Shown here: positions 12,168-62,000 of the stretch, piece after piece
Layout: every line of letters begins with the position of its first letter
Numbering within the stretch: the first letter of the stretch is position 1
Position numbers and translations under genes: made by a program
NCBI RefSeq assembly: GCF_036365525.1
Contig: NW_027142279.1
Coordinates: forward strand, 558,001 to 622,000
Source of the DNA: Heterodontus francisci
Taxonomy: Eukaryota
Length of the DNA: 64,000 nucleotides
Reading direction: 5' to 3'
The notes under the pieces: generated by a model
What the model was told of the DNA's origin: nothing
The model's input: the letters and a program-made list of their open reading frames with translations, nothing else
Databases searched by the model: none

Positions 12168-12206
12168 GGTTTTTGTTGAACTGCTCCATCTCTCTGAGTC
12201 ACTGTT
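12168..12206 (-). promoter_or_regulatory. 23-RSS of V1, defective heptamer
   Basis: AACAGTG-23 bp-ACAAAAACC; the invariant first C is replaced by A. Confidence 0.9.
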
Positions 12207-15356: not shown

Positions 15357-16089
15357 TCCCATCACCAGCTGCCCAGAAATACACCGCCTCGTCCGTGGCG
15401 TTCACACTCTCGATCGTCAGAGTGGATTTCTTATTGTCCAGAGTCCTGGTAATAACAAACCCGCTCTTAAATCCATCTTCATACTGAGGTTCATTGCTGA
15501 GAAAGTTAAACCCGATTAACAGGAATCCTCTGCTGGGGGACTGACGATACCAGTACATGTTATCGCGAACTGCTCCTTTCTGCAGACAGTTCATTTCCAC
15601 GGGTCCTGGTTGTTTACCAGCCAGTGACTGAGGCCATTGATGTATCACATCACCCCGGCAAACACCTAGAAAGAGAAATTAGAGGGAATGAACTAGTATC
15701 GATGGAGATACAATTGCGACGATGGGCGTCGGTGTTGCACCGAATTAACGACGGAAATTCGGTCTGTGTCCTAATTTCCTACAAGAACCTGGATCTTTAC
15801 AACTGTAAAATAGAATTGTGCAATCCAAAAGCTTGCAAGTGGTGCAAACATTAAAGAGTTAAAATCATATTAATAACACTTGTCTTCCCAAACTAGGGGA
15901 CAGATGAATGAGTTCACTGTCTTATATTAAATAATCGATTACTGATTTCACAAGTCACCGCCACTCAGTTTTATTAAGATCATTAATCATCCCTTTCAGT
16001 TGATCAAATGTAGAAGAGTGATTGGGACAGAATTTTAACCTACTCAGCCCCAGAAGGGAAATAACAAAGACGATGAAACTGAAAGGCAT
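15357..16089 (-). pseudogene. TRBV: TCR beta-type V segment V2 (singleton); open frame but second Cys replaced by Trp
   Basis: Leader 16089-16044 MPFSFIVFVISLLGL, V exon 15665-15357 DVIHQWP..MNCLQ..WYRQ..YEDGFKSGF..DEAVYFWAAGDG; TGG at 15375-15373. Confidence 0.8.
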
Positions 16090-40403: not shown

Positions 40404-40442
40404 GGTTTTTGTTGAACTGCTCCATCTCTCTGAGTCACTGTG
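40404..40442 (-). promoter_or_regulatory. 23-RSS of V11
   Basis: CACAGTG-23 bp-ACAAAAACC (consensus). Confidence 0.9.
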
Positions 40443-40964
40443 AAGACTCCAGGCACAGACATACAAGGCCGAGTGATTCTCCTACAGGCTGGAGGACTCC
40501 AGGTTGAACTTGGAGTTACTCGGTCTCTCAGCAGTGAAACTCTCCACCTAACGTTCTGAGTTCACCCTTTGTGCAGTTAGGGAGTAAAACATCAGCTGCG
40601 GCTCCTTCCCCGAGTATTGTCTGTACCAGTACATGTAAGGGTTACTGGTACCATCCACGGTGCATTTCAGCTTCACCTGCTCCCCAGAAAAGTTGGCAAC
40701 AGTGGCGGGAGTCTGGTTTATAGTCTGTGAGTTCACATCTCGGAAAGAGACAGGGAGAGGAGGAGATCAGTAAACAGACAACTTCAGTCCAGTGGGGAGA
40801 AAGAGGAGAGAGAGAGAAAATCAGTCCAGTAGGGAGAGAGAAAGAGAGAGAAGGAGAGAACGAAATAAATAAAAACATATCCTAAAGAAATGTTTAGCGG
40901 AATTATTGTTTCAATAAAATTCCTTACGGTGAAACAGGGTGATCAGAGTCAGTAACAGATACAT
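40443..40964 (-). pseudogene. TRBV: TCR beta-type V pseudogene V11 (family A)
   Basis: Leader 40964-40928, V exon 40738-40443 with in-frame TAG at 40550-40548 and 40484-40482; ends VCAWSL. Confidence 0.9.
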
Positions 40965-42436: not shown

Positions 42437-45310
42437 TTAATGCAAGAAGTGTAGTAGGTAAGGCAGATGAACTTAGGGCTTGGATTAGTACCTGGGAGTA
42501 TGATGTTATTGCTATTACTGAGACCTGGTTGAGGGAAGGGCATGATTGGCAACTAAATATCCCAGGATATCGATGCTTCAGGCAGGATAGAGAGGGAGGT
42601 AAAAGGGGTGGAGGAGTTGCATTACTGGTCAAAGAGGATATCACAGCTGTGCTGAAGGAGGGCACTATGGAGGACTCGAGCAGTGAGGCAATATGGACAG
42701 AACTCAGAAATAGGAAGGGTGCGGTAACAATGTTGGGGCTGTACTACAGGCCTCCCAACAGCGAGCGTGAGATAGAGGTACAAATATGTAAACAGATTAT
42801 GGAAAGATGTAGGAGCAACAGGGTGGTGGTGATAGGAGATTTTAATTTTCCCAACATTGACTGGGATTCACTTAGTGTTAGAGGTCTAGATGGAGCAGAA
42901 TTTGTAAGGAGCATCCAGGAGGGTTTTCTGGAGCAGTATGTAAATAGTCCAACTCGGGAAGGGGCCATACTGGACCTGGTGTTGGGGAATGAGCCCGGCC
43001 AGGTGGTTGAAGTTTCAGTAGGGGACTACTTTGGGAATAGTGATCACAATTCCGTAAGCTTTAAAATACTCATGGACAAAGACGAGAGTGGTCCAAAAGG
43101 GAGAGTGCTAAATTGGGGGAAGGCCAACTACACCAAAATTCGGCAGGAGCTGGGAAATGTAGATTGGGAGCAGCTGTTTGAAGGTAAATCCACATGTGAT
43201 ATGTGGGAGGCTTTTAAAGAGAGGTTGATTAGCGTGCAGGAGAGACATGTTCCTGTGAAAATGAGGGATAGAAATGGCAAGATTAGGGAACCATGGATGA
43301 CAGGTGAAATTGTGAGACTAGCTAAGAGGGAAAAGGAAGCATACATAAGGTCTAGGCGGCTGATGAAAGACGAAGCTTTGAAAGAATATCGGGAATGTAG
43401 GACCAATCTGAAACGAGGAATTAAGAGGGCTAAAAGGGGTCATGAAATATCTTTAGCAAACAGGGTTAAGGAAAATCCCAAAGCCTTTTATTCATATATA
43501 AGGAGAAAGAGGGTAACTAGAGAAAGGATTGGCCCACTAAAGGACAAAGGAGGAATGTTATGCTTGGACTCAGAGAAAATGGGTGAGATTCTAAACGAGT
43601 ACTTTGCATCGGTATTCACCGAGGAGAGGGACATGACGGATGTTGAGGTTAGGAACAGATGTTTGATTACTCTAGGTCAAGTCGGCATAAGGAGGGAGGA
43701 AGTGTTGGGTATTCTAAAGGACATTAAGGTGGACAAGTCCCCAGGTCCGGATGGGATCTATCCCAGGTTACTGAGGGAAGCGAGAGAGGAAATAGCTGGG
43801 GCCTTAACAGATATCTTTGCAGCATCCTTAAACACGGGTGAGGTCCCGGAGGACTGGAGAATTGCTAATGTTGTCCCCTTGTTTAAGAAGGGTAGCAGGG
43901 ATAATCCAGGTAATTATAGACCGGTGAGCCTGACGTCAGTGGTAGGGAAGCTGCTGGAGAAGATACTGAGGGATAGGATCTATTCCCATTTGGAAGAAAA
44001 TGGGCTCATCAGTGATAGGCAACATGGTTTTGTGCAGGGAAGGTCATGTCTTACCAACTTAATAGAATTCTTTGAGGAAGTGACAAAGTTGATTGATGAG
44101 GGAAGGGCTGTCGATGTCATATACATGGACTTCAGTAAGGCGTTTGATAAGGTTCCCCATGGCAGGCTGATGGAGAAAGTGAAGGCGCTTGGGGTCCAAG
44201 GTGTACTAGCTAGATGGATAAAGAACTGGCTGGGCAACAGGAGACAGAGAGTAGCAGTAGAAGGGAGTTTCTCAAAATGGAGACGTGTGACCAGTGGTGT
44301 TCCACAGGGATCCGTGCTGGGACCACTGTTGTTTGTGATATACATTAATGATTTGGAGGAAAGTATAGGTGGACTGATTAGAAAATTTGCAGACGACACT
44401 AAGATTGGTGGAGTAGCAGATAGTGAAGGGGACTGTCAGAGAATACAGCAGAATATAGATAGATTGGAGGCTTGGGCAGAGAAATGGCAGATGGAGTTCA
44501 ATCAGGGCAAATGCGAGGTGATGCATTTTGGAAGATCCAATTCAAGAGTGAACTATACAGTAAATGGAAAAGTCCTGGGGAAAATTGATGTCCAGAGAGA
44601 TTTGGGTGTTCAGGTCCACTGTTCCCTGAAGGTGGCAACGCAGGTAAATAGAGTGGTCAAGAAGGCATACGGCATGCTTTCCTTCATCGGACGGGGCATT
44701 GAGTACAAGAGTTGGCAGGTCATGTTACAGTTGTCTAGGACTTTGGTTCGGCCACATTTGGAATACTGCGTACAGTTCTGGTCGCCACATTATCAAAAGG
44801 ATGTGGATGCTTTGGAAAGGGTGCAGAGGAGGTTCACCAGGATGTTGCCTGGTATGGAGGGCGCTAGCTATGAAGAGAGGTTGAGCAGATTAGGATTATT
44901 TTCATTAGAAAGACGGAGGTTGAGGGGGGACCTGATTGAGGTGTACAAAATCATGAGAGGTATAGACAGGGTGGATAGCAAGAGGCTTTTTCCCAGAGTG
45001 GGGGTTTCAATTACTAGAGGACACGAGTTCAAAGTGAAAGGGGAAAAGTTTAGGGGGGATATGCGTGGAAAGTTCTTTACGCAGAGGGTGGTGGGCACCT
45101 GGAACGCATTGCCAGCGGAGGTGGTAGATGCGGGCACGATGGAGTCTTTTAAGATGTATCTAGACAGATACATGAATGGGCAGGAAGAAAAGAGATACAG
45201 AACCTTAGAAAATAGGCGACATGTTTAGAGAGAGGATCTGGATCGGCGCAGGCTTGGAGGGCCGAAGGGCCTGTTCCTGTGCTGTAATTATCTTTGTTCT
45301 TTTTGTTCTT
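42437..45310 (+). mobile_element. Young 5'-truncated CR1 LINE with uninterrupted ORF2 (APE endonuclease + RT)
   Basis: Frame open from about 42436 (FNARS..ITETW) to 45228 with GDFN, SDH and KFADDTK motifs; 3' hairpin and TTGTTCT tail; TGGT target duplication at 42433-42436 and 45311-45314. Confidence 0.97.
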
Positions 45311-45526: not shown

Positions 45527-46008
45527 AAGACTCCAGGCACAGAAATACATGGCCCAGTGATCCTCCCGGAGGCTGGAGGACTCCAGGTTGAAGTCGGAGT
45601 TGCTCGGTCTCTCGGCGGTGAAACCCTCCAACGCCTCCTCCGGATTTATGTGATTAGTATCCGTGGAATAAAACATAAACTAGTCTCCTTCCCCGGGTAT
45701 TGTCTGTACCAGAACATCTCAGGGTTACTGCTGCCCTGCACAGTGCATTTCAGCTTCACCTTCTCCCCAGAATATTTGGAGACAGCGGCGGGAGTCTGGT
45801 GGATAGTCTGTGAGTTCACATCTGGGAAAGAGACAGGGAGAGGAGGAGATCAATAAACAGGAACATTCAGTCAGTGGGGGAGAGAGAAAGAGAGAAAGAG
45901 AGAGAGAAATAAATAAAAACATAACCTCCAGAAATGTGAAGTAGAATTATTGTTTCAATAAAGTCCCTTACGGTGAATCAGAGTGATCAGAGTCAGTAAC
46001 AGATACAT
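45527..46008 (-). pseudogene. TRBV: TCR beta-type V pseudogene V12 (family A)
   Basis: Leader 46008-45972, V exon 45821-45527; 1-nt deletion near 45683 after WYRQYPGKE; ends YFCAWSL in shifted frame. Confidence 0.9.
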
Positions 46009-48786: not shown

Positions 48787-48825
48787 GGTTTTTGTTGAAC
48801 TGCTCCATCTCTCTGAGTCACTGTG
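48787..48825 (-). promoter_or_regulatory. 23-RSS of V13
   Basis: CACAGTG-23 bp-ACAAAAACC (consensus). Confidence 0.9.
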
Positions 48826-51327: not shown

Positions 51328-53489
51328 CTTTCACTACAACTTGTTCTCTTACTAAACACAGGAGTGAGAGCAGGAGGTTAAAGTCTTGTGAGGGTCCAAA
51401 TTCACTCTTTGCAAATCATTGGGAGGAACATGAAGAGCATTAGGAAGTGATAGAATGTTGGAGACGCCCATTCCCCAGGTCAACAAATCACAATCAAATT
51501 TGTTGCCAATGTCTTTCTCTCTCTCTCTCTTTGTCTCTCAGTCTACCTTCACTCTCTTTCTCTATCACTCCATCTCTCTCTCTCGAGCACTGTCTCCCTA
51601 TCTATCTCAGTCTCTTTGTCTCAGTCTCTCCTCAGTGTCCCACTCTCTCTCTCTCTCTCTCTGTAATTATGTGTCTCTTGCTGTCTCGCTGTCTTTGCCT
51701 CTATCTCTGTCTACCTTTCTGTCTCAGTCTCTTTAACTCTGTCTGTCATTTTTCCTCTCTCTTTCCACTCTCTCACTACATCTCTCTCTCTGTCACACAC
51801 ACACACTCTCTTTCTCACTCTAATTAAGTGGGTGTCCTTGTCCTGTTGATGTGTATCAAGCTGGATCGGCGTGGTCTCCTGCTCTTTCAGTTTTCTCACT
51901 AAATCCTTCTCAAAGCCATTGTCTGTTACATGGTCCTACAGCCCTCCGGTCCCACTTCCTCTGCTGTCCCTGTGGAGAAGGTAAACACAGGTTCAGTGCA
52001 TAAAAACCCAGCTTATTGTCATTGCTTCCTGATAGTGAATAGTTGCAGTGAATCTCAGTTCTGGTGACATCGTGATTAATCGTCCTTTGCCCCTTTCTCC
52101 AGTGCCTATATCTCTAATCTCTCACTGTCACTGTAACCTGTCTTTTCTTAGGAATGTCGTCCTGCAGTTCCCTCCTACATCCTTTCCCCCCTCACTATAT
52201 GTAAAAACAAGACCCCACCCTCCACCCCCCCACACCCCCGCCTCCCCACATTCGAAAACGGACAGCTCGTTTCAGCTTTACCTCGATGGGAGGGTGCAGG
52301 GAACATTTGTATGGAGGAAAGGAGAAATGTGTGGGTGTGTTGGATCCAGAGGGGCTGAATGGCCTCCTCCTGTTTATTGTGTTCCTGATAAACATTTTCC
52401 TCATCCCAGGGAAAGAAGACACTCTGATAGTGGTTAAAACCTGTATCTTTTTACTGATATTCTCTTCTGATAATTACAACCTTTCAGTTCCAGTATCATC
52501 CTTGTTAATCATTAATAGAAAGATAGAAAGCTTTCCAATACAGAAGGAGGGCATTCCTTGCATCTTCGCCAGTGTCTCTACATTTTGTTTCTGAGTTTTA
52601 TTCTAAGCGTCTCTTATTGTCCCAAAAAACGGTCACCCTGCAGCTCCCAGTCCACTGCTGGCTCGGGTGTAGATTTCTCAACCTCAGACTCAAATCCCTC
52701 ATTGGCTTCGGCCTTCACTGGCTCTGAACCACCTCCAGCCCAACACCCCTCTGAGATATTGTCTGCATGTTTGTTGGTGTGTCTCTGTGTGTGTGTATAT
52801 CTGCATGTTTGTGTCTGTTTTTGTGTATCTGTACTGAGGGAGCGCTTCACTTTAATATGTTGGCACTTTTCCAACGACTTTCCAAAGTTTATTTGCACCA
52901 CATGTAAACGCCTCTCATTGAACCAATCAGACACCAGGTAAATAAAACCTCAGTGCTGTCAGCAAAATACAATTGACCCTTTTACCCCTTCTTGTTTGCT
53001 GTCACCAATTAACTCAGGCCTTGTTAACTGTTCAGGGGCCATACATAGAGACACATCACTCTCGGAGAGACAATACTGAATGAACACTGTGTTGTGAGGG
53101 GCACTCTAAGGGGGCCTGGAGAATAAAGGCCCCCTCGACAAATAATATATAAAAGGGGCCTGGGGTATAAAGGCTTCCTTTAAAAACAAACGGAGTTAGA
53201 TACAGAATAAAGCTCCCTCTCCGCTGTTCCCATAAAAAAAGAAGAGAAAGCGGGGTTGGTTGTTGCTTGATTGGAGGTGCTGCCTGCTGGTTGCAGCAAC
53301 GAACCCCAGCTAAAGAAAAAATAAAGGGGCGCTATATTAAACTGGAGCGGGGCCCTACTGGGAGATTACAGCACCATCGGAGGTGCAGTAAGGAGAGGGT
53401 GATGTACTCTCGGGAAGCAGTGCTGAGGGAGAGCTTCACTATCGGAGCATCATTCTTCCCACACTGCAGTTGTACAGGTTCCGGGAGTA

Positions 53490-54020: not shown

Positions 54021-54784
54021 TCCCCTGCCCATCCTGTTCTCCCTTTCTCTACTACCCTCCGCCTTTCCATTCCCCCTCCTTCTCACACTCCTCCCTCTGC
54101 TCTGTGTATGGACAGTGAGGGGGTTCAGTGACAGAGCCATTCCTGACATCATTGCTGAATGGCCGTGCTCAAATGTTGAGCTTAACCTTATATGATCTGT
54201 AAACGGCACGAGAGCCAATAGTTTCTCCATATCTGCTGAAATAAATTAGATGACACTTTATTGTTTTATACTGAAGGGAATGCCAGTCTAGTTTCTCCAA
54301 AATGTCCTGATCATTGAACTACTTCTGCTCAGGTATCATTGTAGTGAACCTAAACAGCAACCCCTCCAAGGACGATGCTTTCTGAGCTTTGGTGTGCAGA
54401 ACTGAATGTGTTAACTCCACATGGGGTTTAGTCAGAGTTTCCCAGAATTGTGGTAGATCCTTGACCCCTTTTCATCACAGCCCACTTGTGACTTAGAAAG
54501 CGTCTGGTGGATCTGCTCAGGTTTATTTTGGCAGCGGTTAATTCAACAGGAGTTGAACTTAAATCACAGTGTGTTTGTCATCCTGTCAGACGTACATTGT
54601 GAACATTGGACTGCCAACTGTTGGTGTTCGAAGCAGCAGAGACTGATCGAAGGTAAAGTATAAATTATAATCACAGAGAAAATGGGTGAAATATTTCATG
54701 GTGCCAGCTGATCGTAGATGACATTGTATAAGGACATGTAGAGAATAGTAAAATGTATTCTTGGGATGCGGGTAACCCTGGCAT

Positions 54785-55465
54785 GGAGCAGCACTCTCTC
54801 AGTACTGACCCTCCGAAAGTGCAGCACTCCCTCAGTACTGACCCTCCAACAGTGCAGCACTCCCTCAGTACTGACCCTCCAAAAGTGAGGCACTCCCTCA
54901 GTACTGACCCTCCAACAGTGCAGCACTCCCTCAGTACTGACCCTCCAACAGTGCAGCACTCCCTCAGTACTGACCCTCCAATAGTGCAGCACTCCCTCAG
55001 TACTGACCCTCCAACAGTGCAGCACTCCCCCAGTACTGACCCTCCAACAGTGCGGCTCTCCCTCAGTACTGAACCTCCAACAGCGCAGTGCTCCCTCAGT
55101 ACTGACCTTCCAATGGTGCGGCATTGCCTCAGCCCTGACCCTCCGACAGTGAGGCGCTCCCTCAGTACTGACCCTCCAAAAGTGCGGCGCTGCCTCAGTA
55201 CTGACCCTCCGACAGTGCAGCACTCCCTCAGTACTGACCCTTTGGTAGTGTGGTGCTCCCTCAGTACTGACCCTCCGACAGTGCGGCGCTGCCTCAGTAC
55301 TGACCCTCCGACAGTGCCGCACTCCCTCAGTACTGACCCTCTGACAGTGCAGCATTCCATCAGTACTGACCCTCCGACAGTGCGGCACTCCCTCAGTACT
55401 GACCCTCCGACAGTGCGGCACTCCCTCATTACTGACCCTCCGACAGTGCGGCACTCCCTCAGTTT
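54785..55465. repeat. 33-bp minisatellite, about 20 copies
   Basis: Unit CAGTACTGACCCTCCRACAGTGCAGCACTCCCT; related to the arrays in V7-V9 introns. Confidence 0.93.
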
Positions 55466-55499
55466 CGACTCTTTGACAGAGAATCGCTGCCTCTGTACT

Positions 55500-56180
55500 A
55501 ACTGTGCAGCAATCTCCTCCAGCCCCTTCAATCCTCCCATTCTCTGTAACTTCCTCCAGCCCCTGCAACCCTTCCTGCCTCTGTAATCTCCTCTAGCGCC
55601 GACAAGCTTTCCTGTCTCTGGAACCTCCTCCAGCCCCTACAATCCTCCCTATCTCTGTAACCTTCTCCAGTCCCTACAACCCTCCCTATCTCTGTAACCT
55701 CCTCCAGTCCCTACAACCCTCCCTATCTCTGTAACCTCCTCCAGTGCCGACAACCATCACTCTCTCTGTCATCGCCTCCAGCCCCTGCATCCCACCGTAT
55801 CTCTGTAACCTCCTCCAGTGCCTACAACCATCACTCTCTCTGTAATCGCCTCCAGCCCCTACATCCCACCCTATCTCTGTAACCTCCTCCAGTCCCTGCA
55901 ACCATCACTCTCTCTGTAATCGCCTCCAGCCCCTGCAACCCACCCTATCTCTGTAACCCCCTCCAGTGCCTACAACCATCACTCTCTCTGTAATCCCCTC
56001 CAACCGCTACATCCCACCCTATCTCTGTAACCTCCTCCAGCCCCGACAACCATCACTCTCTCTGTAACCTCCTCCAGCAACTGCAACTCTCCCTATCTCT
56101 GTATATCCTCCAGCAACTTCAACACTCCCTACCTTGGTAACCTCTTCCAGGCCCTGCAACTCTCCCTATCTCTATAAAAC
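55500..56180. repeat. About 35-bp minisatellite
   Basis: Unit TCTCTGTAACCTCCTCCAGCCCCTACAACCCTCCCTA-like. Confidence 0.85.
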
Positions 56181-56409
56181 ATTCCAGAATTGAATGGGTT
56201 CTACAGAAATAAAGAAGGTGTGAAGTAGTCATTGCCGGTCACTACAGTGTAGAAAATCCCTCTTTCCCAGCAGAGGCGGGAGGTAATAAACATTTATCTT
56301 AAAAAGGCAGCTCTGGAAAGAATCGGTCACTGTCACTTTTGTCTGTCTCTCTCTCTTCCTCTCTCTCTCTCTTTCCGTCTCTTGCTCTATCCATCTTTCT
56401 CTCTGTCCG

Positions 56410-56446
<37 letters not shown>

Positions 56447-56922
56447 CACTTGCTCTCTCTCTGTCGCTCTCTGTCGCTCTCTTTCTGTCTGTCGATGTCT
56501 TTCTCTGTCTCTGTCGCGCTTGCTATCTCTCTCTCTTTGCCTCTCTCTCCCTCTATCTTTCTATCTTTCTCTCTCTATCTTTGTCACTCTCTCTCTCTGT
56601 CTTTCTCTAAGTTTCTATCACTTGCTCTCTGTCTCTCTTGCTCTCTCTCCGTCTCTCTCTCTCTGTCTTTCTCACTTGCTCTTTATCTTTCTCTCTCTCT
56701 CTGTCTGTCTCTCTAAATTTCTATCACTTGCTCTCTATCTATCTCTCTCTCCGTCTCTCTCAGTTGCTCTCTATCTATCGCTCTCTATCTTTGTCACCCT
56801 CTCTCTCTCTCGCTCTGTCTCTCTCACACTGACTGGGTCTTCGATTAGAAATTCTGTCCCATTGATGACCTCCTCCCTTTGTTCCCTCTTTCAGGATTTG
56901 GAGTGGGCAGGAAGATCCCACG

Positions 56923-58965
56923 ATGCGGACTCTCTGCTTGTTCCTGTTGGTGCTGTTCTGGGTCCCCGAGTCAGATGCGGCTGCACTAAATGACAATGTC
57001 TTGGCTGGAATTGTCTCACAGTAAGTGTTCATCCTGCCCAGGCCTTTCACCATTCACTGACAGGGTTAGGCTGTGAGAATGGCCCAGGTCTACTCTCCTG
57101 GCATGAGTCTCCGCTCTGTCAAAGTGATGAGGGGGAACAGGGCAGAGTCCAGTTAAATTAAAATAACATGGAACTACAGAGAGGGGAAGGTGAGCGAGAA
57201 AGGACTCAGAGTGAGACATGTCACTTCATCAATAATCTGACTCACTGACCCCACTCACTGACCCCGCTCACTGACCCCACTCACTGACCCCACTCACTGA
57301 CCCCACTTACATACCGCACTCACTGACCCCACTCACTGCCCCCACTCACTGACCCCACTCACTGACCCCACCCACTGACCCCTCTCACTGACCCCTCTCA
57401 CTGACCCCTCTCACTGACCCCACTCACTGACCCCACTCACTGACCCCTCTCACTGACCCCACTCACTGACCCCACTCACTGACCCCGCTCACTGACCTCG
57501 CTCACTGACCTCGCTCCTCTCCCCCTCTCGCTCTCTCTCCCTGTTGCCCTGTGTCTATCTCTTTCTCTCTCTATGTCTTCCATTCTATTTATCTCTTGGT
57601 TTGTGTTGCTGTTAATCTCTCACTGTATTTCTCCTGTCACTTGTCCCTCTCCATGCTCGACGGCCTGTCTATCTCTCTCATCTCTGTCTCTATTACTTTA
57701 TCCTTTTTCAGTTTATCACTGCCTCTGTTCCCTCTCTCTGTCTCTATCTGTATCTGTCTCCATCTTGTTCTTCCTTTTTCTGTCTCTATCTGTTTCTATG
57801 TACTTGTCTCCAGAACTCTTCCTTTCCCTCGCTTTGTTTCTTCTCTCCATCTCTGTCTCTCCTGCTGTCTTCTACCCTCCCTCTATCACATTCTCTGTCT
57901 CCCTCCCTCCATCCATCTCTCCACCTCTTTGTTTCTCCCTTGCTCTTGTTCCCATCCCTCTTTCCATCTCTGTTTCATTGGAATGAGTTCATTCGGTCCC
58001 GTCCTTTCCAATGTCGTAAATTAATGACCAAATTTATTGAAATGCCACAGCATACAAGACTACGGGCCAAGTGCTGGGAAATAGGATTAGAATAGTTAGG
58101 TGCTTGATGGCTGGCACAGACACGATGGGCCGAAGGGCCTGTTTCTGTGCTGTGTAACTCTTTGACTCTCTGACTCAAACTCCCAGTTTCCCTCCTTCCA
58201 TCATGAGGTATGGTATTAAATAGGCAGGTGACCATAATCCACATCATACTGACCTGGCACAAGGAGAATTTCATTCACAATTCCTACCTTGACTCTCACT
58301 TTGTGTTTGTCCCTTTCAGATTCCGACAAGTGTCTGGCCACCAGCCCAGCAGTACGACTGGGGGAGGACAGTTCGCCTTCCTGATGGTGTTAACTCCTCA
58401 ACAATGCACCGGTGCCAATATCAATCAGAATGTACAATTCAGACCCTCTGCTTCAGGAAGACCGGTTATTCGTGGCGGTGTGAATTACTTCCTGAACAGT
58501 CGATCAGTAAACTACATCGCAGTTTACCCCAACACAGGAAGTCGCTGCTCAGAGAATAAACTGTTACACTTCACTCAGGAGGATCAACGCAATGGGCAGA
58601 CTGACAGTGCAGCTCGGCTGCTTCAGAATAGCATCAATAACCAGGGGCTGCAGGTTGGCTGTGTCATTCTCTACACCACCTACACCCCCTGCATCCAGAG
58701 CTGCTTCAGTGGCAATGAGAATTGTGACATCCTCGCCGCGTTAGGCCAGGCACCCTTTAGCCACCCATGGGCTGGCCCGCAGGTTCAGAAGTATTTTGTC
58801 TTCAGTACATTGTACCGATACGACAATAATAGAAATAAGATCCCCACAGTTCGAAACAAGCTGGGACAAGTTACCCAGGCAGGCTTTCACATCAGAAAGT
58901 GTGATGGGACCAACAGCCAAATACAGTGTCAGGACTGCACCCACCCTGGGGGCTACTGTATCTAG
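56923..58965 (+). CDS. Secreted AID/APOBEC-like deaminase (SNAD family, SNAD1-like), 247 aa; coding exons 56923-57020 and 58320-58965
   Basis: Exon 1 MRTLCLFLLVLFWVPESDAAALNDNVLAGIVS (signal peptide) ends CA|GTAAGT, phase 2; acceptor CCCTTTCAG|A at 58319/58320 restores the frame (Q-FRQV). Exon 2 has QFAFLMVLTPQQC, YIAVYP..CSE..LL, CVILYTTYTPCIQSC, YFVFSTLY and C-terminal RKC..CQDC..C. An upstream acceptor at 56894/56895 implies a non-coding first exon. Confidence 0.85.
57238..57515. repeat. 13-bp minisatellite in the deaminase intron
   Basis: Unit TCACTGACCCCAC, about 21 copies. Confidence 0.9.
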
Positions 58966-59075
58966 TAAACAGTCTCACTACAGGAGGCAATAGCAGATCA
59001 GAGAGTCCCAGGAAAACAGTGCAAATCATTCTATTACTCTAGAAATCTATCTACTTCCATTTTATTCTGTTAATA

Positions 59076-62000
59076 TAGAACATACGTAGAAAATACAGCA
59101 CAGAACAGGCCCTTCGGCCCACGATGTTGTGCCGATCCTTTGTCCTCTGTCAAGGACAATTTAATCTATACCCCATCATTCTCCTTTATCCATATACCTA
59201 TCTAAAAGCCGTTTGAAAGTCCCTAAAGTTTCTGACTCAACAACTTCCCCAGGCAAGGCATTCCATGCCCCGACCACTCTCTGGGTAAAGAACCTTCCCC
59301 TGACATCCCCCTTATATCTCCCACCCTTCACCTTAAATTTATGACCCCTTGTAACGCTTTGCTCCACCCGGGGAAAAAGTTTCTGACTGTCTACCCTATC
59401 TATTCCCCTGATCATCTTATAAACCTCTATCATGTCACCCCTCATCCTTCTCCGTTCTAATGAGAAGAGGCCTAGAATGTTCAGCCTTTCCTCGTAAGAC
59501 TTATTCTCCATTCCAGGCAACATCCTGGTAAATCTCCTCTGCACCCTCTCCAAGGCTTCCACATCCTTCCTAAAATGAGGCGACCAGAACTGCACACAGT
59601 ACTCCAAATGAGGCCTTACCAAGGTCCTGTACAGCTGCATCATCACCTCACGGCTCTTAAATTCAATCCCTCTGCTAATGAACGCTAACACCCCATATGC
59701 CTTCTTCACAGCCCTATCCACTTGAGTTGCAACTTTCAACGATCTATGCACATAGACCCCAAGGTCTCTCTGCTCCTCCACATGCCCAAGAACCCTACCG
59801 TTAACCCAGTATTTTGCATTCGTGTTTGTCCTTCCAAAATGGACGACCTCACACTTTTCAGGGTTAAACTCCATCTGCCACTTTTCAGCCCAGCACTGCA
59901 ACCTATCCAAGTCCCTTTGCAGACGACAATAGCCCTCCTCGGTATCCACAACTCCACCAACCTTTGTATCATCTGCAAATTTACTGACCCACCCTTCGAC
60001 TTCCTCATCCAAGTCGTTAATAAAAATCACAAACAGGAGAGGACCCAGAACTGATCCCTGTGGCACGCCACTGGTAACTGGGCTCCAGGCTGAGTATTTA
60101 CCATCTAAGACCACTCTCTGCCTTCTATCAGTTAGCCAATTCTTAATCTAACTGGCCACATTCCCCACTATCCCATGCCTCCTGACTTTCTCCATAAGTC
60201 TACCATGGGGGACCTTATCAAATGCCTTACTAAAATCCATGTACACCACATCCACTGGTTTACCCTCATCCACTTGCTTGGTCACCTGCTCAAAGAATTC
60301 AATCAGGCTTGTGAGGCAAGACCTACCCCTCACAAAACCGTGCTGACTGTCCCGAATCAAGCAGTGTCTTTCCAGATGCTCAGAAATCCTATCCCTCAGC
60401 ACCTTTTCCATCAACTTGCCTACCACCGAAGTAAGACTAACTGGCCTGTAATTCCCAGGGTTGTTCCTATTCCCTTTCTTGAACAGGGGCACAACATTTG
60501 CCACCCTCCAATCACCTGGTACCACCCCCGTCAACAGAGAAGATGAAAAGATCATTGCCAGCGGCTCTGCAATTTCATCCCTTGCTTCCCATAACATCCT
60601 TGGATATACCCCGTCAGGCCCGGGAGACTTGTCTATCTTCAAGTTATTCAAAAACCCCAACACATCTTCCCTCCTAACGAGCACTTCCTCGAGCTTACCA
60701 GTCTGTTTCACACCGTCCTCTTCAGTAATACACCCCTTCTCATTCGTAAATACCGAAGAGAAGTACTCATTCAAAACCTCACTTATCTCTTCCGGCTCAA
60801 CACACAGTCTCCCGCTATTGTCCTTGACCGGACCTACGGTCCCCCTAGTCATCCTCATATTTCTGACATACGCGTAAAAGGCCTTGGGGTTTTCTTTTAT
60901 CCTACCCGCCAAGCATTTTTCATGCCCTCTCTTAGCTCTCCTAATCCCTTTCTTCAGATCCTTCCTGGCCATCTTGTATCCCTCCAGAGCTATGCCTGTG
61001 CCCTTTTTCCTCAACCTTATATACGCATCCTTCTTCTTCCTAACAAGACTCTCAACCTCTCTTGTCAACCACGGTTCCCTCACATGACCATCCCTTCCCT
61101 GTCTGACAGGGACATGCTTATCAATGGCCCCTACTATCTGCTCCTTGAAAAAGTTCCACATTTCGACCGTGCCCTTCCCTGCCAGCATATGCTCCCAACT
61201 TATGCTCCTCAGTTCCTGCCTGACAGCATCATATCTACCCTTCCCCCAATTGTAAACCTTGCCCTGTTGCACATACCTATCCCTCTCCATTACCACAGTG
61301 AATGCTACAGAATTGTGATCACTATCTCCAAAGTGCTCGCCCACCAACAGCTCTATCACTTGCCCTGGTTCATTACCTAGTACCAAATCCAATATTGCCT
61401 CCCCTCTGGTCGGGCAGTCTACATACTGAGTCAGAAAAGCTTCCTGGACATACTGCACAAACACTACCCCATCCAAACTATTCGATCTGAAGAGTTGCCA
61501 ATCAATATTTGGGAAGTTGAAATCCCCCATAATTACTACCCTGTGACTTCTGCTCCTTTCCAAAATCTGTTTCCCAATCTGCTCTTCCACCTCCCTGCTG
61601 CTATTGGGGGGCCGATAGAAAACTCCCATCAAGGTGACTGCTCCTTTCCTGTTCCTGACCTCAACCCACAGTGCCTCAGTCGGCAGATCCTCCTCGAAAA
61701 TTCTTTCAGCAGTTGTTACACTATTTCTAACTAACAATGCCACCCCCCCACCTCTTTTACCACCATTCCTAATCTTATGAAAACATCTATAACCAGGTAC
61801 CTCCAAGAACCATTCCTCCCCCTCACCTATCCACGTTTCAGTGATGGCCACAACATCGTAGTCCCAAGTGCCCATCCACGCCTTCAATTCACTCACCTTA
61901 TTCCTGATGCTTCTTGCGTTGAAGTATATGCACTTTAACCCTTCTCCGTGCCCATCTGTCCTCTGCGACAGTGCTACCTTCCCCAATACCTCACTACACT

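What the first reader, a model, noticed from the sequence alone, without database searches (positions are those of the whole stretch)
56923..58965. Intact secreted AID/APOBEC-like deaminase (SNAD-type) gene hidden across two exons
Seen: a signal-peptide exon (56923-57020) that the ORF track does not report in this frame splices in frame through a canonical GT-AG phase-2 intron to a 646-nt exon. The product is 247 aa, free of stops and Cys-rich. Established: zinc-dependent deaminases use (H/C)xE...PCx2-4C, and the SNAD clade of AID/APOBEC-like proteins is secreted. As I recall it, SNAD1 carries an N-terminal Q(Y/F)A..C strand, CV(V/I)xY(S/T)xxxPCxxxC, an FVF strand and a C-terminal Cys cluster; all are present here in order. 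Inference: this is a probably unannotated cartilaginous-fish SNAD, a candidate extracellular immune effector acting on nucleic acids or nucleosides.
Basis: partly seen in the sequence, partly recalled or inferred. Interest (0 to 1): 0.9.

Follow-up and report, generated by a model that had tools for sequence, protein, structure and literature searches.

The report
Horn shark secreted SNAD1 deaminase gene
This is a real, spliced and transcribed horn-shark gene for a secreted AID/APOBEC-like zinc deaminase of the SNAD1 family, but NCBI has already predicted this exact protein and the family is already known from shark plasma, so it is an ordinary new member.

Summary
The exon at 56923-57020 (ATG, signal-peptide-like start, GTAAGT donor) joins in phase 2 to 58320-58965 (acceptor TTTCAG). 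Contigs of one public run cover only the exons and contain exactly this 57020->58320 joint.

The 214-aa second exon scores above Pfam's cut-off for SNAD1 (E 4.5e-15). A model of the identical database protein is closest to APOBEC3, AID and APOBEC1 structures (Z about 8). E111, P156-C157, C161 and the C-terminal Cys cluster are conserved across 23 relatives.

- **Already annotated.** RefSeq XP_067884565.1 (Heterodontus francisci, "uncharacterized protein", 247 aa) is identical to both exons. SNAD1 proteins were also reported in nurse-shark plasma in 2022.
- **Probably three exons.** Transcript ends point to a non-coding exon ending at 54652.

C-x-E in place of H-x-E is the family norm (20 of 23 sequences), not an oddity. 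The gene lies on the opposite strand beside an array of 12 antigen-receptor V segments (TCR-beta-like) and has several near-identical paralogues. Earlier notes of this scan report the same arrangement elsewhere in this genome.

Catalysis and substrate are untested here, and I found no SNAD activity assay in the papers read. Interest is low to moderate.

The parts
54626..54652 (+). 3' end of a non-coding upstream exon (5' UTR); its start is not determined
   Evidence: Four X2 contig ends lying before 56893 read a 25-nt sequence. That sequence matches 54626-54650 exactly and only there. It is followed by AG|GTAAAG. The frame has a stop at 54600-54602 and no ATG after it (my reading).
54653..56894 (+). 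Intron 1 (GT..AG), inferred; filled with tandem arrays
   Evidence: Donor GTAAAG at 54653 and acceptor ..CCCTCTTTCAG ending at 56894. Arrays: 33-bp x20 at 54791-55463, 37-bp x18 at 55514-56177, and TC-rich at 56342-56825.
56895..56922 (+). 5' UTR part of the second exon
   Evidence: X2 contig coverage starts in the bin 56877-56953, and the loose end sits at 56893.
56923..57020 (+). First coding exon: Met1 to the first two bases of codon 33; signal-peptide-like N-terminus
   Evidence: Arg2, then hydrophobic core residues 4-14 (Kyte-Doolittle 9-mer up to 3.48), then S17-D-A19 (small residues at -3 and -1). 100% identical to P0008 residues 1-32.
57021..58319 (+). Phase-2 intron, GTAAGT...TTTCAG; holds a 13-bp minisatellite and a dispersed repeat
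   Evidence: Joint 57020->58320 in 3 contigs of X2. Minisatellite at 57240-57510, 20.8 copies. The stretch 58032-58185 is covered at high depth in all four runs, so it is a repeat.
58320..58965 (+). Second coding exon: deaminase domain, residues 33-247 plus TAG
   Evidence: Pfam SNAD1 E 4.5e-15. 214/214 identical to P0008. Fold matches to APOBEC/AID structures.
58546..58554 (+). Codons C109-S110-E111: first zinc ligand and catalytic glutamate
   Evidence: E111 is invariant in 23 sequences. Column 109 is C in 20, H in 2 and S in 1. It sits at the start of model helix 110-115.
58687..58704 (+). Codons P156-C157-I-Q-S-C161: second zinc motif (PCx3C)
   Evidence: P156, C157 and C161 are each conserved in at least 90% of 23 sequences. 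The motif lies directly after model strand 147-154.
58900..58959 (+). Codons 227-246: C-terminal Cys cluster C227, C236-x-x-C239, C246
   Evidence: C227 and C236 are invariant; C239 and C246 are conserved in at least 90%. This matches the SNAD1/2 four-Cys cluster described in PMC5889660.
58966..59075 (+). 3' UTR, at least to about 59075; the end is not determined
   Evidence: X2-only coverage in the bins 58956-59100, with a loose end at 59075. No AATAAA or ATTAAA within 58966-59800.

Best explanation
The locus is one copy of a horn-shark (Heterodontus francisci) multigene family encoding SNAD1, a secreted AID/APOBEC-like zinc deaminase. Shown here: the gene has a non-coding leader exon (probable), a signal-peptide exon and a single exon for the whole deaminase domain. 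The spliced mRNA, from this copy or from 99%-identical paralogues, is present in one run of a sample and absent from two other runs of the same sample. The protein belongs to Pfam SNAD1 and models as a deaminase fold closest to APOBEC3, AID and APOBEC1. Inferred: the N-terminal peptide is cleaved near A19 and the mature protein of about 228 aa is exported to plasma. The conserved extra cysteines (C62, C147, and C227/C236/C239/C246) probably stabilise it through disulfides. C109, C157 and C161 would hold a zinc ion whose bound water, activated by E111, deaminates cytosine to uracil. The likeliest substrate is single-stranded nucleic acid of pathogens met outside the cell or in the secretory/endocytic route, which would make it an innate immune effector. 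I put the enzymatic step itself at roughly even odds, because I found no SNAD assay in the papers I read.
For: Gene structure and splice. Identity to RefSeq XP_067884565.1. Family: Pfam SNAD1 at 56.6 bits on exon 2 and 57.5 bits on P0008, and 22 of 23 relatives match SNAD1. Fold: the AF2 model has pLDDT 82.6 and pTM 0.85. Foldseek's top hits are all APOBEC3 or AID (probability 0.90-0.99, E from 9e-4). An unbiased search of 48,161 chains puts APOBEC3G, 3H, AID and APOBEC1 on top at Z 7.5-8.0, followed by other zinc deaminases at Z 5-6.6. Re-alignment gives Z up to 8.4 over 140 residues. Catalytic residues are conserved, and the two active-site blocks (residues 101-120 and 141-160) vary least among shark paralogues. 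Secretion: the N-terminus has the n-h-c layout of a signal peptide. SNAD1 orthologues were detected by LC-MS/MS in nurse-shark plasma (PMC9207270). The family is defined by signal peptides (PMC5889660). A three-Cys zinc site is catalytically competent in tetrameric cytidine deaminases (established knowledge).
Against: No deaminase activity has been shown for any SNAD in what I read: 'no available knowledge on ... catalytic activity' (PMC11004436). Structural similarity is only middling (Z about 8, TM 0.3-0.4). The tool notes that Z 7-8 is a typical best score even for models without a clear match. Here, though, the list is filled by a single superfamily. The model shows no regular helix right after PCx3C (residues 155-169 are coil in DSSP), unlike classical APOBECs. 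Zinc-site geometry could not be measured. Contigs laid at 95% or more identity cannot separate this copy from its 99% paralogues. A loose end at 59075 shows that some transcripts diverge from this copy's 3' flank. No signal-peptide predictor was available.
Confidence: 0.8

Rival explanations
1. Secreted pseudoenzyme or binding protein. The fold and cysteines are kept for stability or ligand binding (for example nucleic-acid or microbial-surface binding in plasma), but it does not deaminate anything.
For: No activity is reported for any SNAD. In an oxidising extracellular milieu, three active-site cysteines could form disulfides instead of holding zinc. The model shows no regular helix after PCx3C. 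One relative (P0022) has Ser at the first ligand position and lacks the PCxxC block.
Against: E111 is invariant and P156, C157 and C161 are at least 90% conserved across sharks, bowfin, salamander and teleost relatives. The active-site blocks are the least variable parts among paralogues. That pattern is the one expected of a working catalytic site.
Confidence: 0.2
2. An active deaminase whose substrate is a free base, nucleoside, nucleotide or other small molecule in plasma or mucus, rather than a polynucleotide.
For: The C-x-E three-Cys site resembles cytidine and dCMP deaminases more than H-x-E APOBECs. dCMP deaminases and RibD also appear among the fold matches at Z 5-6.6. Free nucleosides are accessible outside the cell.
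Against: The best structural matches are the polynucleotide-editing APOBEC3, AID and APOBEC1. SNADs are placed as sister to classical AADs, with high variability in substrate-binding loops, which was read as target-motif diversification (PMC5889660).
Confidence: 0.15
3. This particular copy is silent or a recent redundant duplicate (or a haplotype duplicate in the assembly). The transcripts seen would then come from its 99%-identical paralogues.
For: Four proteins at least 99% identical exist on three scaffolds, and one of them occurs on two scaffolds. 446 of 911 X2 contigs laid are only 95-99% alike. The loose end at 59075 fits transcripts whose 3' flank differs from this copy, where a LINE lies from about 59176.
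Against: 465 X2 contigs are at least 99% alike, and no alternative letters reached the listing threshold on this stretch. The frame, the splice sites and the upstream exon junction are all intact in this copy.
Confidence: 0.25
4. Chance open frame or decayed pseudogene.
For: None beyond the repeat-rich surroundings.
Against: Pfam E 4.5e-15, an identical RefSeq model, a spliced transcript and conserved catalytic residues.
Confidence: 0.01

Closest known systems
SNAD1 (Pfam PF18744; Krishnan et al. 2018, PMC5889660)
   Same: Signal peptide. (H/C)xE and PCxnC zinc motifs. [quoted passage not shown] Helices 5 and 6 replaced by a Cys-rich C-terminal strand region with C...CxxC...C. Occurs as lineage-specific multigene expansions.
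   Different: The 2018 survey did not list cartilaginous fishes. This protein is only 21-54% identical to relatives from other species. Its Pfam score is modest (57 bits against a best of E 2e-47 among relatives).
Nurse-shark plasma SNAD1 proteins (PMC9207270, 2022)
   Same: Cartilaginous-fish SNAD1 found as circulating plasma proteins. They support secretion and an origin before bony vertebrates.
   Different: A different order of sharks. The nearest orectolobiform relative retrieved here (Stegostoma, P0005) is about 50% identical. The nurse-shark sequences themselves were not available for comparison.
Teleost SNAD1 (carp Cap31/snad1 variants, zebrafish; PMC11004436, PMC13402138)
   Same: Genes of 2-3 exons and multiple paralogues. 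Expression is immune-associated and regulated by temperature and infection. Activity is still uncharacterised.
   Different: That paper describes the site as His plus two Cys. The shark, bowfin and salamander relatives here use Cys at the first position. The genomic neighbourhood also differs: zebrafish SNAD1 genes lie on chromosome 15.
Classical AID/APOBEC deaminases (APOBEC3A/B/G/H, AID, APOBEC1)
   Same: Best structural matches. Same core fold, and the same order of zinc motifs relative to strand 3 and helix 2.
   Different: No sequence-level match to any solved structure. The classical enzymes are intracellular, use H-x-E, have C-terminal helices 5 and 6, and lack the disulfide-type Cys cluster.

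Membership tests
SNAD1 (PF18744) | Scores above the curated Pfam gathering threshold for SNAD1, and better than for sister models | tested here: met
   56.6 bits on exon 2 and 57.5 bits on P0008, against a cut-off of 25. SNAD2 scores only 15.3 bits, below its cut-off.
SNAD1 (PF18744) | N-terminal signal peptide | tested here: met
   M-R, then an 11-residue hydrophobic core, then P-E-S-D-A|A; hydropathy up to 3.48. The same layout is seen in 22 aligned relatives. No dedicated predictor was available, so this rests on rules and reading.
SNAD1 (PF18744) | Zinc-chelating (H/C)xE and PCxnC motifs with a catalytic Glu | tested here: met
   C109-S-E111 and P156-C157-x3-C161. E is invariant and the Cys residues are at least 87-90% conserved in 23 sequences.
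SNAD1 (PF18744) | Deaminase fold of the AID/APOBEC-like (helix-4) division | tested here: met
   Model pLDDT 82.6. The top hits are APOBEC3G, 3H, AID and APOBEC1 at Z 7.5-8.4 with 134-143 residues aligned. All further hits down to Z 5 are zinc deaminases or the related FdhD. The strength of the match is moderate.
SNAD1 (PF18744) | [quoted passage not shown] | tested here: met
   The model has helices 59-63 and 88-91 between strands 52-57 and 98-101. The loop between them has lower confidence (pLDDT about 70).
SNAD1 (PF18744) | Four-Cys cluster: end of strand 5, CxxC in strand 6, Cys in strand 7 | tested here: met
   C227 lies near the end of strand 222-228. C236 lies in strand 235-238, C239 lies just after it, and C246 is in the tail.
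SNAD1 (PF18744) | Neomorphic strands 6 and 7 in place of helices 5 and 6 | tested here: inconclusive
   Strand 6 (235-238) is modelled and there is no C-terminal helix. Residues 241-247 have pLDDT 62 and no strand is called there.
SNAD1 (PF18744) | The protein is actually secreted | not testable with these tools
   Only indirect evidence: SNAD1 orthologues in nurse-shark plasma by LC-MS/MS.
Zinc-dependent cytidine deaminase (function) | Zinc binding and C-to-U deamination | not testable with these tools
The literature read reports none for SNADs.
Classical AID/APOBEC (AID, APOBEC1-4) | Intracellular protein, H-x-E, C-terminal helices 5 and 6, sequence match to the classical families | tested here: not met
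   Signal peptide present, C-x-E, a Cys-rich strand region at the C-terminus, no Pfam APOBEC hit, and no sequence match to any PDB chain.

The most novel reading that the evidence does not exclude
The repeated placement of SNAD1 copies among antigen-receptor V segments is not an accident of block duplication. Instead it reflects a functional or regulatory tie: the deaminase genes ride the lymphoid-specific chromatin of a TCR locus, and the family has diversified as a secreted, target-motif-variable extracellular mutator arm of shark immunity.
Probability: 0.07. Interest if true: 0.65.

Novelty: new member of a known kind. Interest (0 to 1): 0.25.

Why it matters
SNADs are the only AID/APOBEC-like deaminases predicted to act outside the cell, and the papers I read report no substrate or activity for them. 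A well-defined shark member helps in four ways:
- Its exact gene structure is now laid out, including a likely non-coding leader exon.
- There is evidence of strong expression limited to one of three runs of the same sample.
- There is a confident model to work from.
- It gives a clean construct for the first activity assays, and it fixes Cys-x-Glu as the usual active-site form in this family.

The finding itself adds no new kind of system. The protein is already in RefSeq and shark SNAD1 is published. The only less-known aspect is its position beside, and apparently repeatedly within, an antigen-receptor V array.

Tried and rejected
**Exons not joined.** Each was searched by reference. For full-length work I used the database protein P0008, which is identical to both exons.

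The paralogues' DNA, their neighbourhoods and synteny in other sharks could therefore not be examined, and no dN/dS could be computed.

**Sequence searches of the PDB.** The single protein gave nothing. The 23-sequence profile gave only a short match to a streptococcal pilin (11 bits per stretch, doubled because the chain is a tandem fusion), which I reject as chance.

**Zinc-site geometry.** I used conservation and secondary-structure position instead.

**Naming the chain of the neighbouring V segments.** The word-index search found no candidate. The Atlas search returned V-set clusters of mixed TCR and Ig chains at equal scores. 'TCR-beta-like' therefore rests on motifs (MYWYRQ, YFCAW, 23-bp RSS) and on earlier scan notes, not on a test.

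**Second SNAD copy in the window.** None was found by tblastn.

**Poly(A) signal.** No canonical signal was found after the stop codon.

**'CxE is an anomaly or pseudoenzyme mark'.** Rejected as an anomaly, since 20 of 23 family members have it.

Full report
**Observation**

- An ATG at 56923 opens a 98-nt coding stretch that ends ...TCACA at 57020 and is followed by GTAAGT.
- A pyrimidine-rich tract ending TTTCAG precedes 58320.
- The split codon CA|A encodes Gln33, so the intron is phase 2.
- The frame then runs without a stop to TAG at 58963-58965.
- The short first-exon ORF does appear in the mechanical ORF list once the length threshold is lowered.

Each was searched by reference. For full-length analyses I used a database protein that turned out to be identical to both.

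**Identity**

Exon 2 alone matches Pfam SNAD1 (PF18744) at E 4.5e-15 and 56.6 bits, against a curated cut-off of 25. SNAD2 scores below its cut-off.

A protein search returned five shark proteins, the best of them from Heterodontus francisci. Within the best 90% cluster, P0008 (RefSeq XP_067884565.1, 'uncharacterized protein', 247 aa) is identical to exon 1 over 32/32 residues and to exon 2 over 214/214 residues. It has Gln at position 33, the residue the split codon predicts.

So NCBI's pipeline has already produced exactly this gene model, and the window is horn-shark DNA. Only the name is missing.

**Transcription and gene structure**

Four public runs that hold part of the stretch were laid on 56800-59100.
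- In run X2, contigs cover 56877-57030 and 58263-59100 at very high word depth. They leave the intron empty except for dispersed repeats.
- Three X2 contigs carry the joint 57020->58320 with GT..AG ends.
- Loose ends at 57020 and 58320 read the first letters of exon 2 and the last letters of exon 1.
- Runs X1 and X3, from the same sample, show none of this, so expression is restricted to one of the three libraries.

Four X2 contig ends just before 56893 carry a 25-nt sequence. It occurs once in the window, at 54626-54650, followed by AG|GTAAAG. At 56894 there is a good acceptor...CCCTCTTTCAG. The gene therefore most likely has a non-coding leader exon ending at 54652 and an intron of about 2.2 kb. 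That intron is filled with 33-bp, 37-bp and TC-rich tandem arrays. In the leader exon the reading frame has a stop at 54600-54602 and no ATG after it, so 56923 remains the start codon.

Caveats:
- The runs are kept as contigs, and their RNA nature is a guess of the index. The exon-only coverage and the joint argue for RNA.
- Copies that are 99% identical cannot be told apart at the 95% threshold.
- A loose end at 59075 shows that some transcripts differ from this copy's 3' flank.

**Family and active site**

A full scan of 1.8 billion representatives found 21 relatives. Those that carry names come from sharks (Pristiophorus, Stegostoma, Mustelus, Heptranchias, Scyliorhinus), bowfin, a salamander and a teleost, and all are 'uncharacterized'. 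Of the 23 aligned sequences, 22 match Pfam SNAD1.

In the alignment:
- E111, C227 and C236 are invariant.
- C62, C147, P156, C157, C161, C239 and C246 are each conserved in at least 90% of sequences.
- The first zinc-ligand column is Cys in 20 sequences, His in 2 and Ser in 1.

Cys-x-Glu is thus the normal form in this family, not a sign of decay. Three-Cys zinc sites are active in tetrameric cytidine deaminases (established knowledge). The deaminase superfamily signature is given as HxE/CxE/DxE in PMC5889660. Among eight shark sequences, the two active-site blocks (residues 101-120 and 141-160) vary least.

**Structure**

AlphaFold2 on that alignment gave pLDDT 82.6 and pTM 0.85. The order of elements is helix 24-38, strand 52-57, a helical insert, strand 98-101, helix 110-115 starting right at C-S-E, strand 147-154 followed by PCx3C, strand 189-196, helix 207-219, strand 222-228 and strand 235-238. 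This is the deaminase core plus the SNAD1/2 features described by Krishnan et al. [quoted passage not shown]

- Foldseek's list consists of APOBEC3F, 3G, 3B, 3A, 3C, 3H and AID (E from 9e-4, probability 0.8-0.99).
- An independent all-against-representatives search puts APOBEC3G, APOBEC3H, AID and APOBEC1 first at Z 7.5-8.0. ADAT2/3, RibD, dCMP deaminases and TadA follow at Z 5-6.6.
- Re-alignment reaches Z 8.4 over 140 residues at rmsd 3.4-3.6.

These scores are moderate, but the list is homogeneous. Two limits remain. The model shows no regular helix immediately after PCx3C.

**Mechanism**

Shown: an intact gene, a spliced transcript, family membership, the fold, and conservation of the catalytic residues.

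Inferred:
- The signal peptide is cleaved near A19 (Arg2, hydrophobic core, S-D-A).
- The protein is exported to plasma, as SNAD1 orthologues are in nurse shark (PMC9207270).
- The conserved extra cysteines stabilise it through disulfides.
- A zinc site (C109, C157, C161) with E111 as proton shuttle deaminates cytosine. The likely substrate is pathogen nucleic acid outside the cell or in the endocytic or secretory route, as proposed for the family.

The 2024 review states that there is no knowledge of SNAD catalytic activity, and the 2026 carp paper adds expression data only. The rivals therefore remain open: a pseudoenzyme or binding protein, a small-molecule substrate, and silence of this particular copy.

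**Context**

Twelve V-set gene segments lie between 12.2 and 49.2 kb, each followed by a heptamer, a 23-bp spacer and a nonamer. All are on the minus strand. There were 13 RSS-like matches against 0.64 expected by chance; the one at 52816 has no V before it.
- Eight read through cleanly.
- The V at 15357 lacks the second Cys.
- The Vs at 40443 and 48826 carry stops, and the V at 45527 is frameshifted.
- Their motifs (MYWYRQ, YFCAW) look like TCR beta, but my attempts to name the chain were uninformative.

The SNAD1 gene is on the plus strand. Its leader exon lies about 5.4 kb from the last V, which is a pseudogene, so the two are head-to-head. LINE reverse-transcriptase remnants flank the gene.

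Earlier notes of this scan report SNAD copies inside V arrays at several other places of this genome. One follow-up concluded that only the address is new. I confirm the arrangement for this window only. Paralogues at 99%, 85% and 71-75% identity exist on at least four scaffolds. Some may be haplotype duplicates, since one protein occurs on two scaffolds.

**Comparison and novelty**

This is a member of SNAD1 by every defining feature that could be tested. It is not a classical AID/APOBEC. The family (2018), its presence in sharks (2022) and this very protein model (RefSeq) are all public.

What is added here is modest:
- the leader exon;
- the library-restricted expression;
- the finding that CxE is the family norm;
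- the neighbourhood next to V segments.

I rate it a new member of a known kind, of low to moderate interest.

Noticed in passing
window 12168-49185, minus strand: Array of 12 V-set gene segments, each followed by a 23-bp-spacer RSS. RSS matches lie at 12168, 15318, 17616, 19638, 24242, 28848, 32084, 34330, 36719, 40404, 45488 and 48787. They fall into at least four sequence types in local tandem duplicates. The Vs at 40443 and 48826 have stops, the V at 45527 is frameshifted, and the V at 15357 lacks the second Cys. The motifs look like TCR beta, but the chain was not established.
   Followed up: partly
window 40404-40442 and 48787-48825: Two RSSs identical over all 39 bases, including the spacer, behind two V pseudogenes of the same type. 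This points to a recent duplication of about 8.4 kb that includes a LINE (42529-45228).
   Followed up: no
window 54791-56825: The inferred first intron of the SNAD1 gene is almost entirely tandem arrays: 33-bp x20, 37-bp x18 (148-bp higher order) and a 480-bp TC-rich tract. These generate long spurious ORFs on both strands (54671-55586 and 56339-56993).
   Followed up: partly
window 57240-57510: 13-bp minisatellite (ACTCACTGACCCC, 20.8 copies, 92% matches) inside the coding intron.
   Followed up: no
window 58032-58185: Short dispersed repeat in the intron, covered at very high depth in all four runs, including two runs of a different organism (B). It is probably a SINE-like element shared among sharks. 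A similar motif recurs after 59085.
   Followed up: no
window 59075-61986: X2 transcripts diverge from the window after 59075. A LINE (endonuclease plus reverse transcriptase, minus strand, ORFs 59176-60114 and 60148-61986) abuts the 3' UTR. No canonical poly(A) signal follows the stop codon. The element may have been inserted into this copy's 3' UTR.
   Followed up: no
P0002 (XP_067881645.1), paralogue on another scaffold: The RefSeq model of the 85% paralogue starts 27 residues upstream (MEKQNQ...) in what corresponds to the leader exon. In this window the same frame is closed by a stop at 54600-54602, so the extension is copy-specific or a modelling artefact.
   Followed up: partly
P0014, P0016, P0017 (bowfin and unnamed relatives): Some SNAD1 relatives carry an extra C-terminal tail of about 110-130 residues made of repeated CxxC-type Cys motifs, which is absent from the shark proteins.
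   Followed up: no
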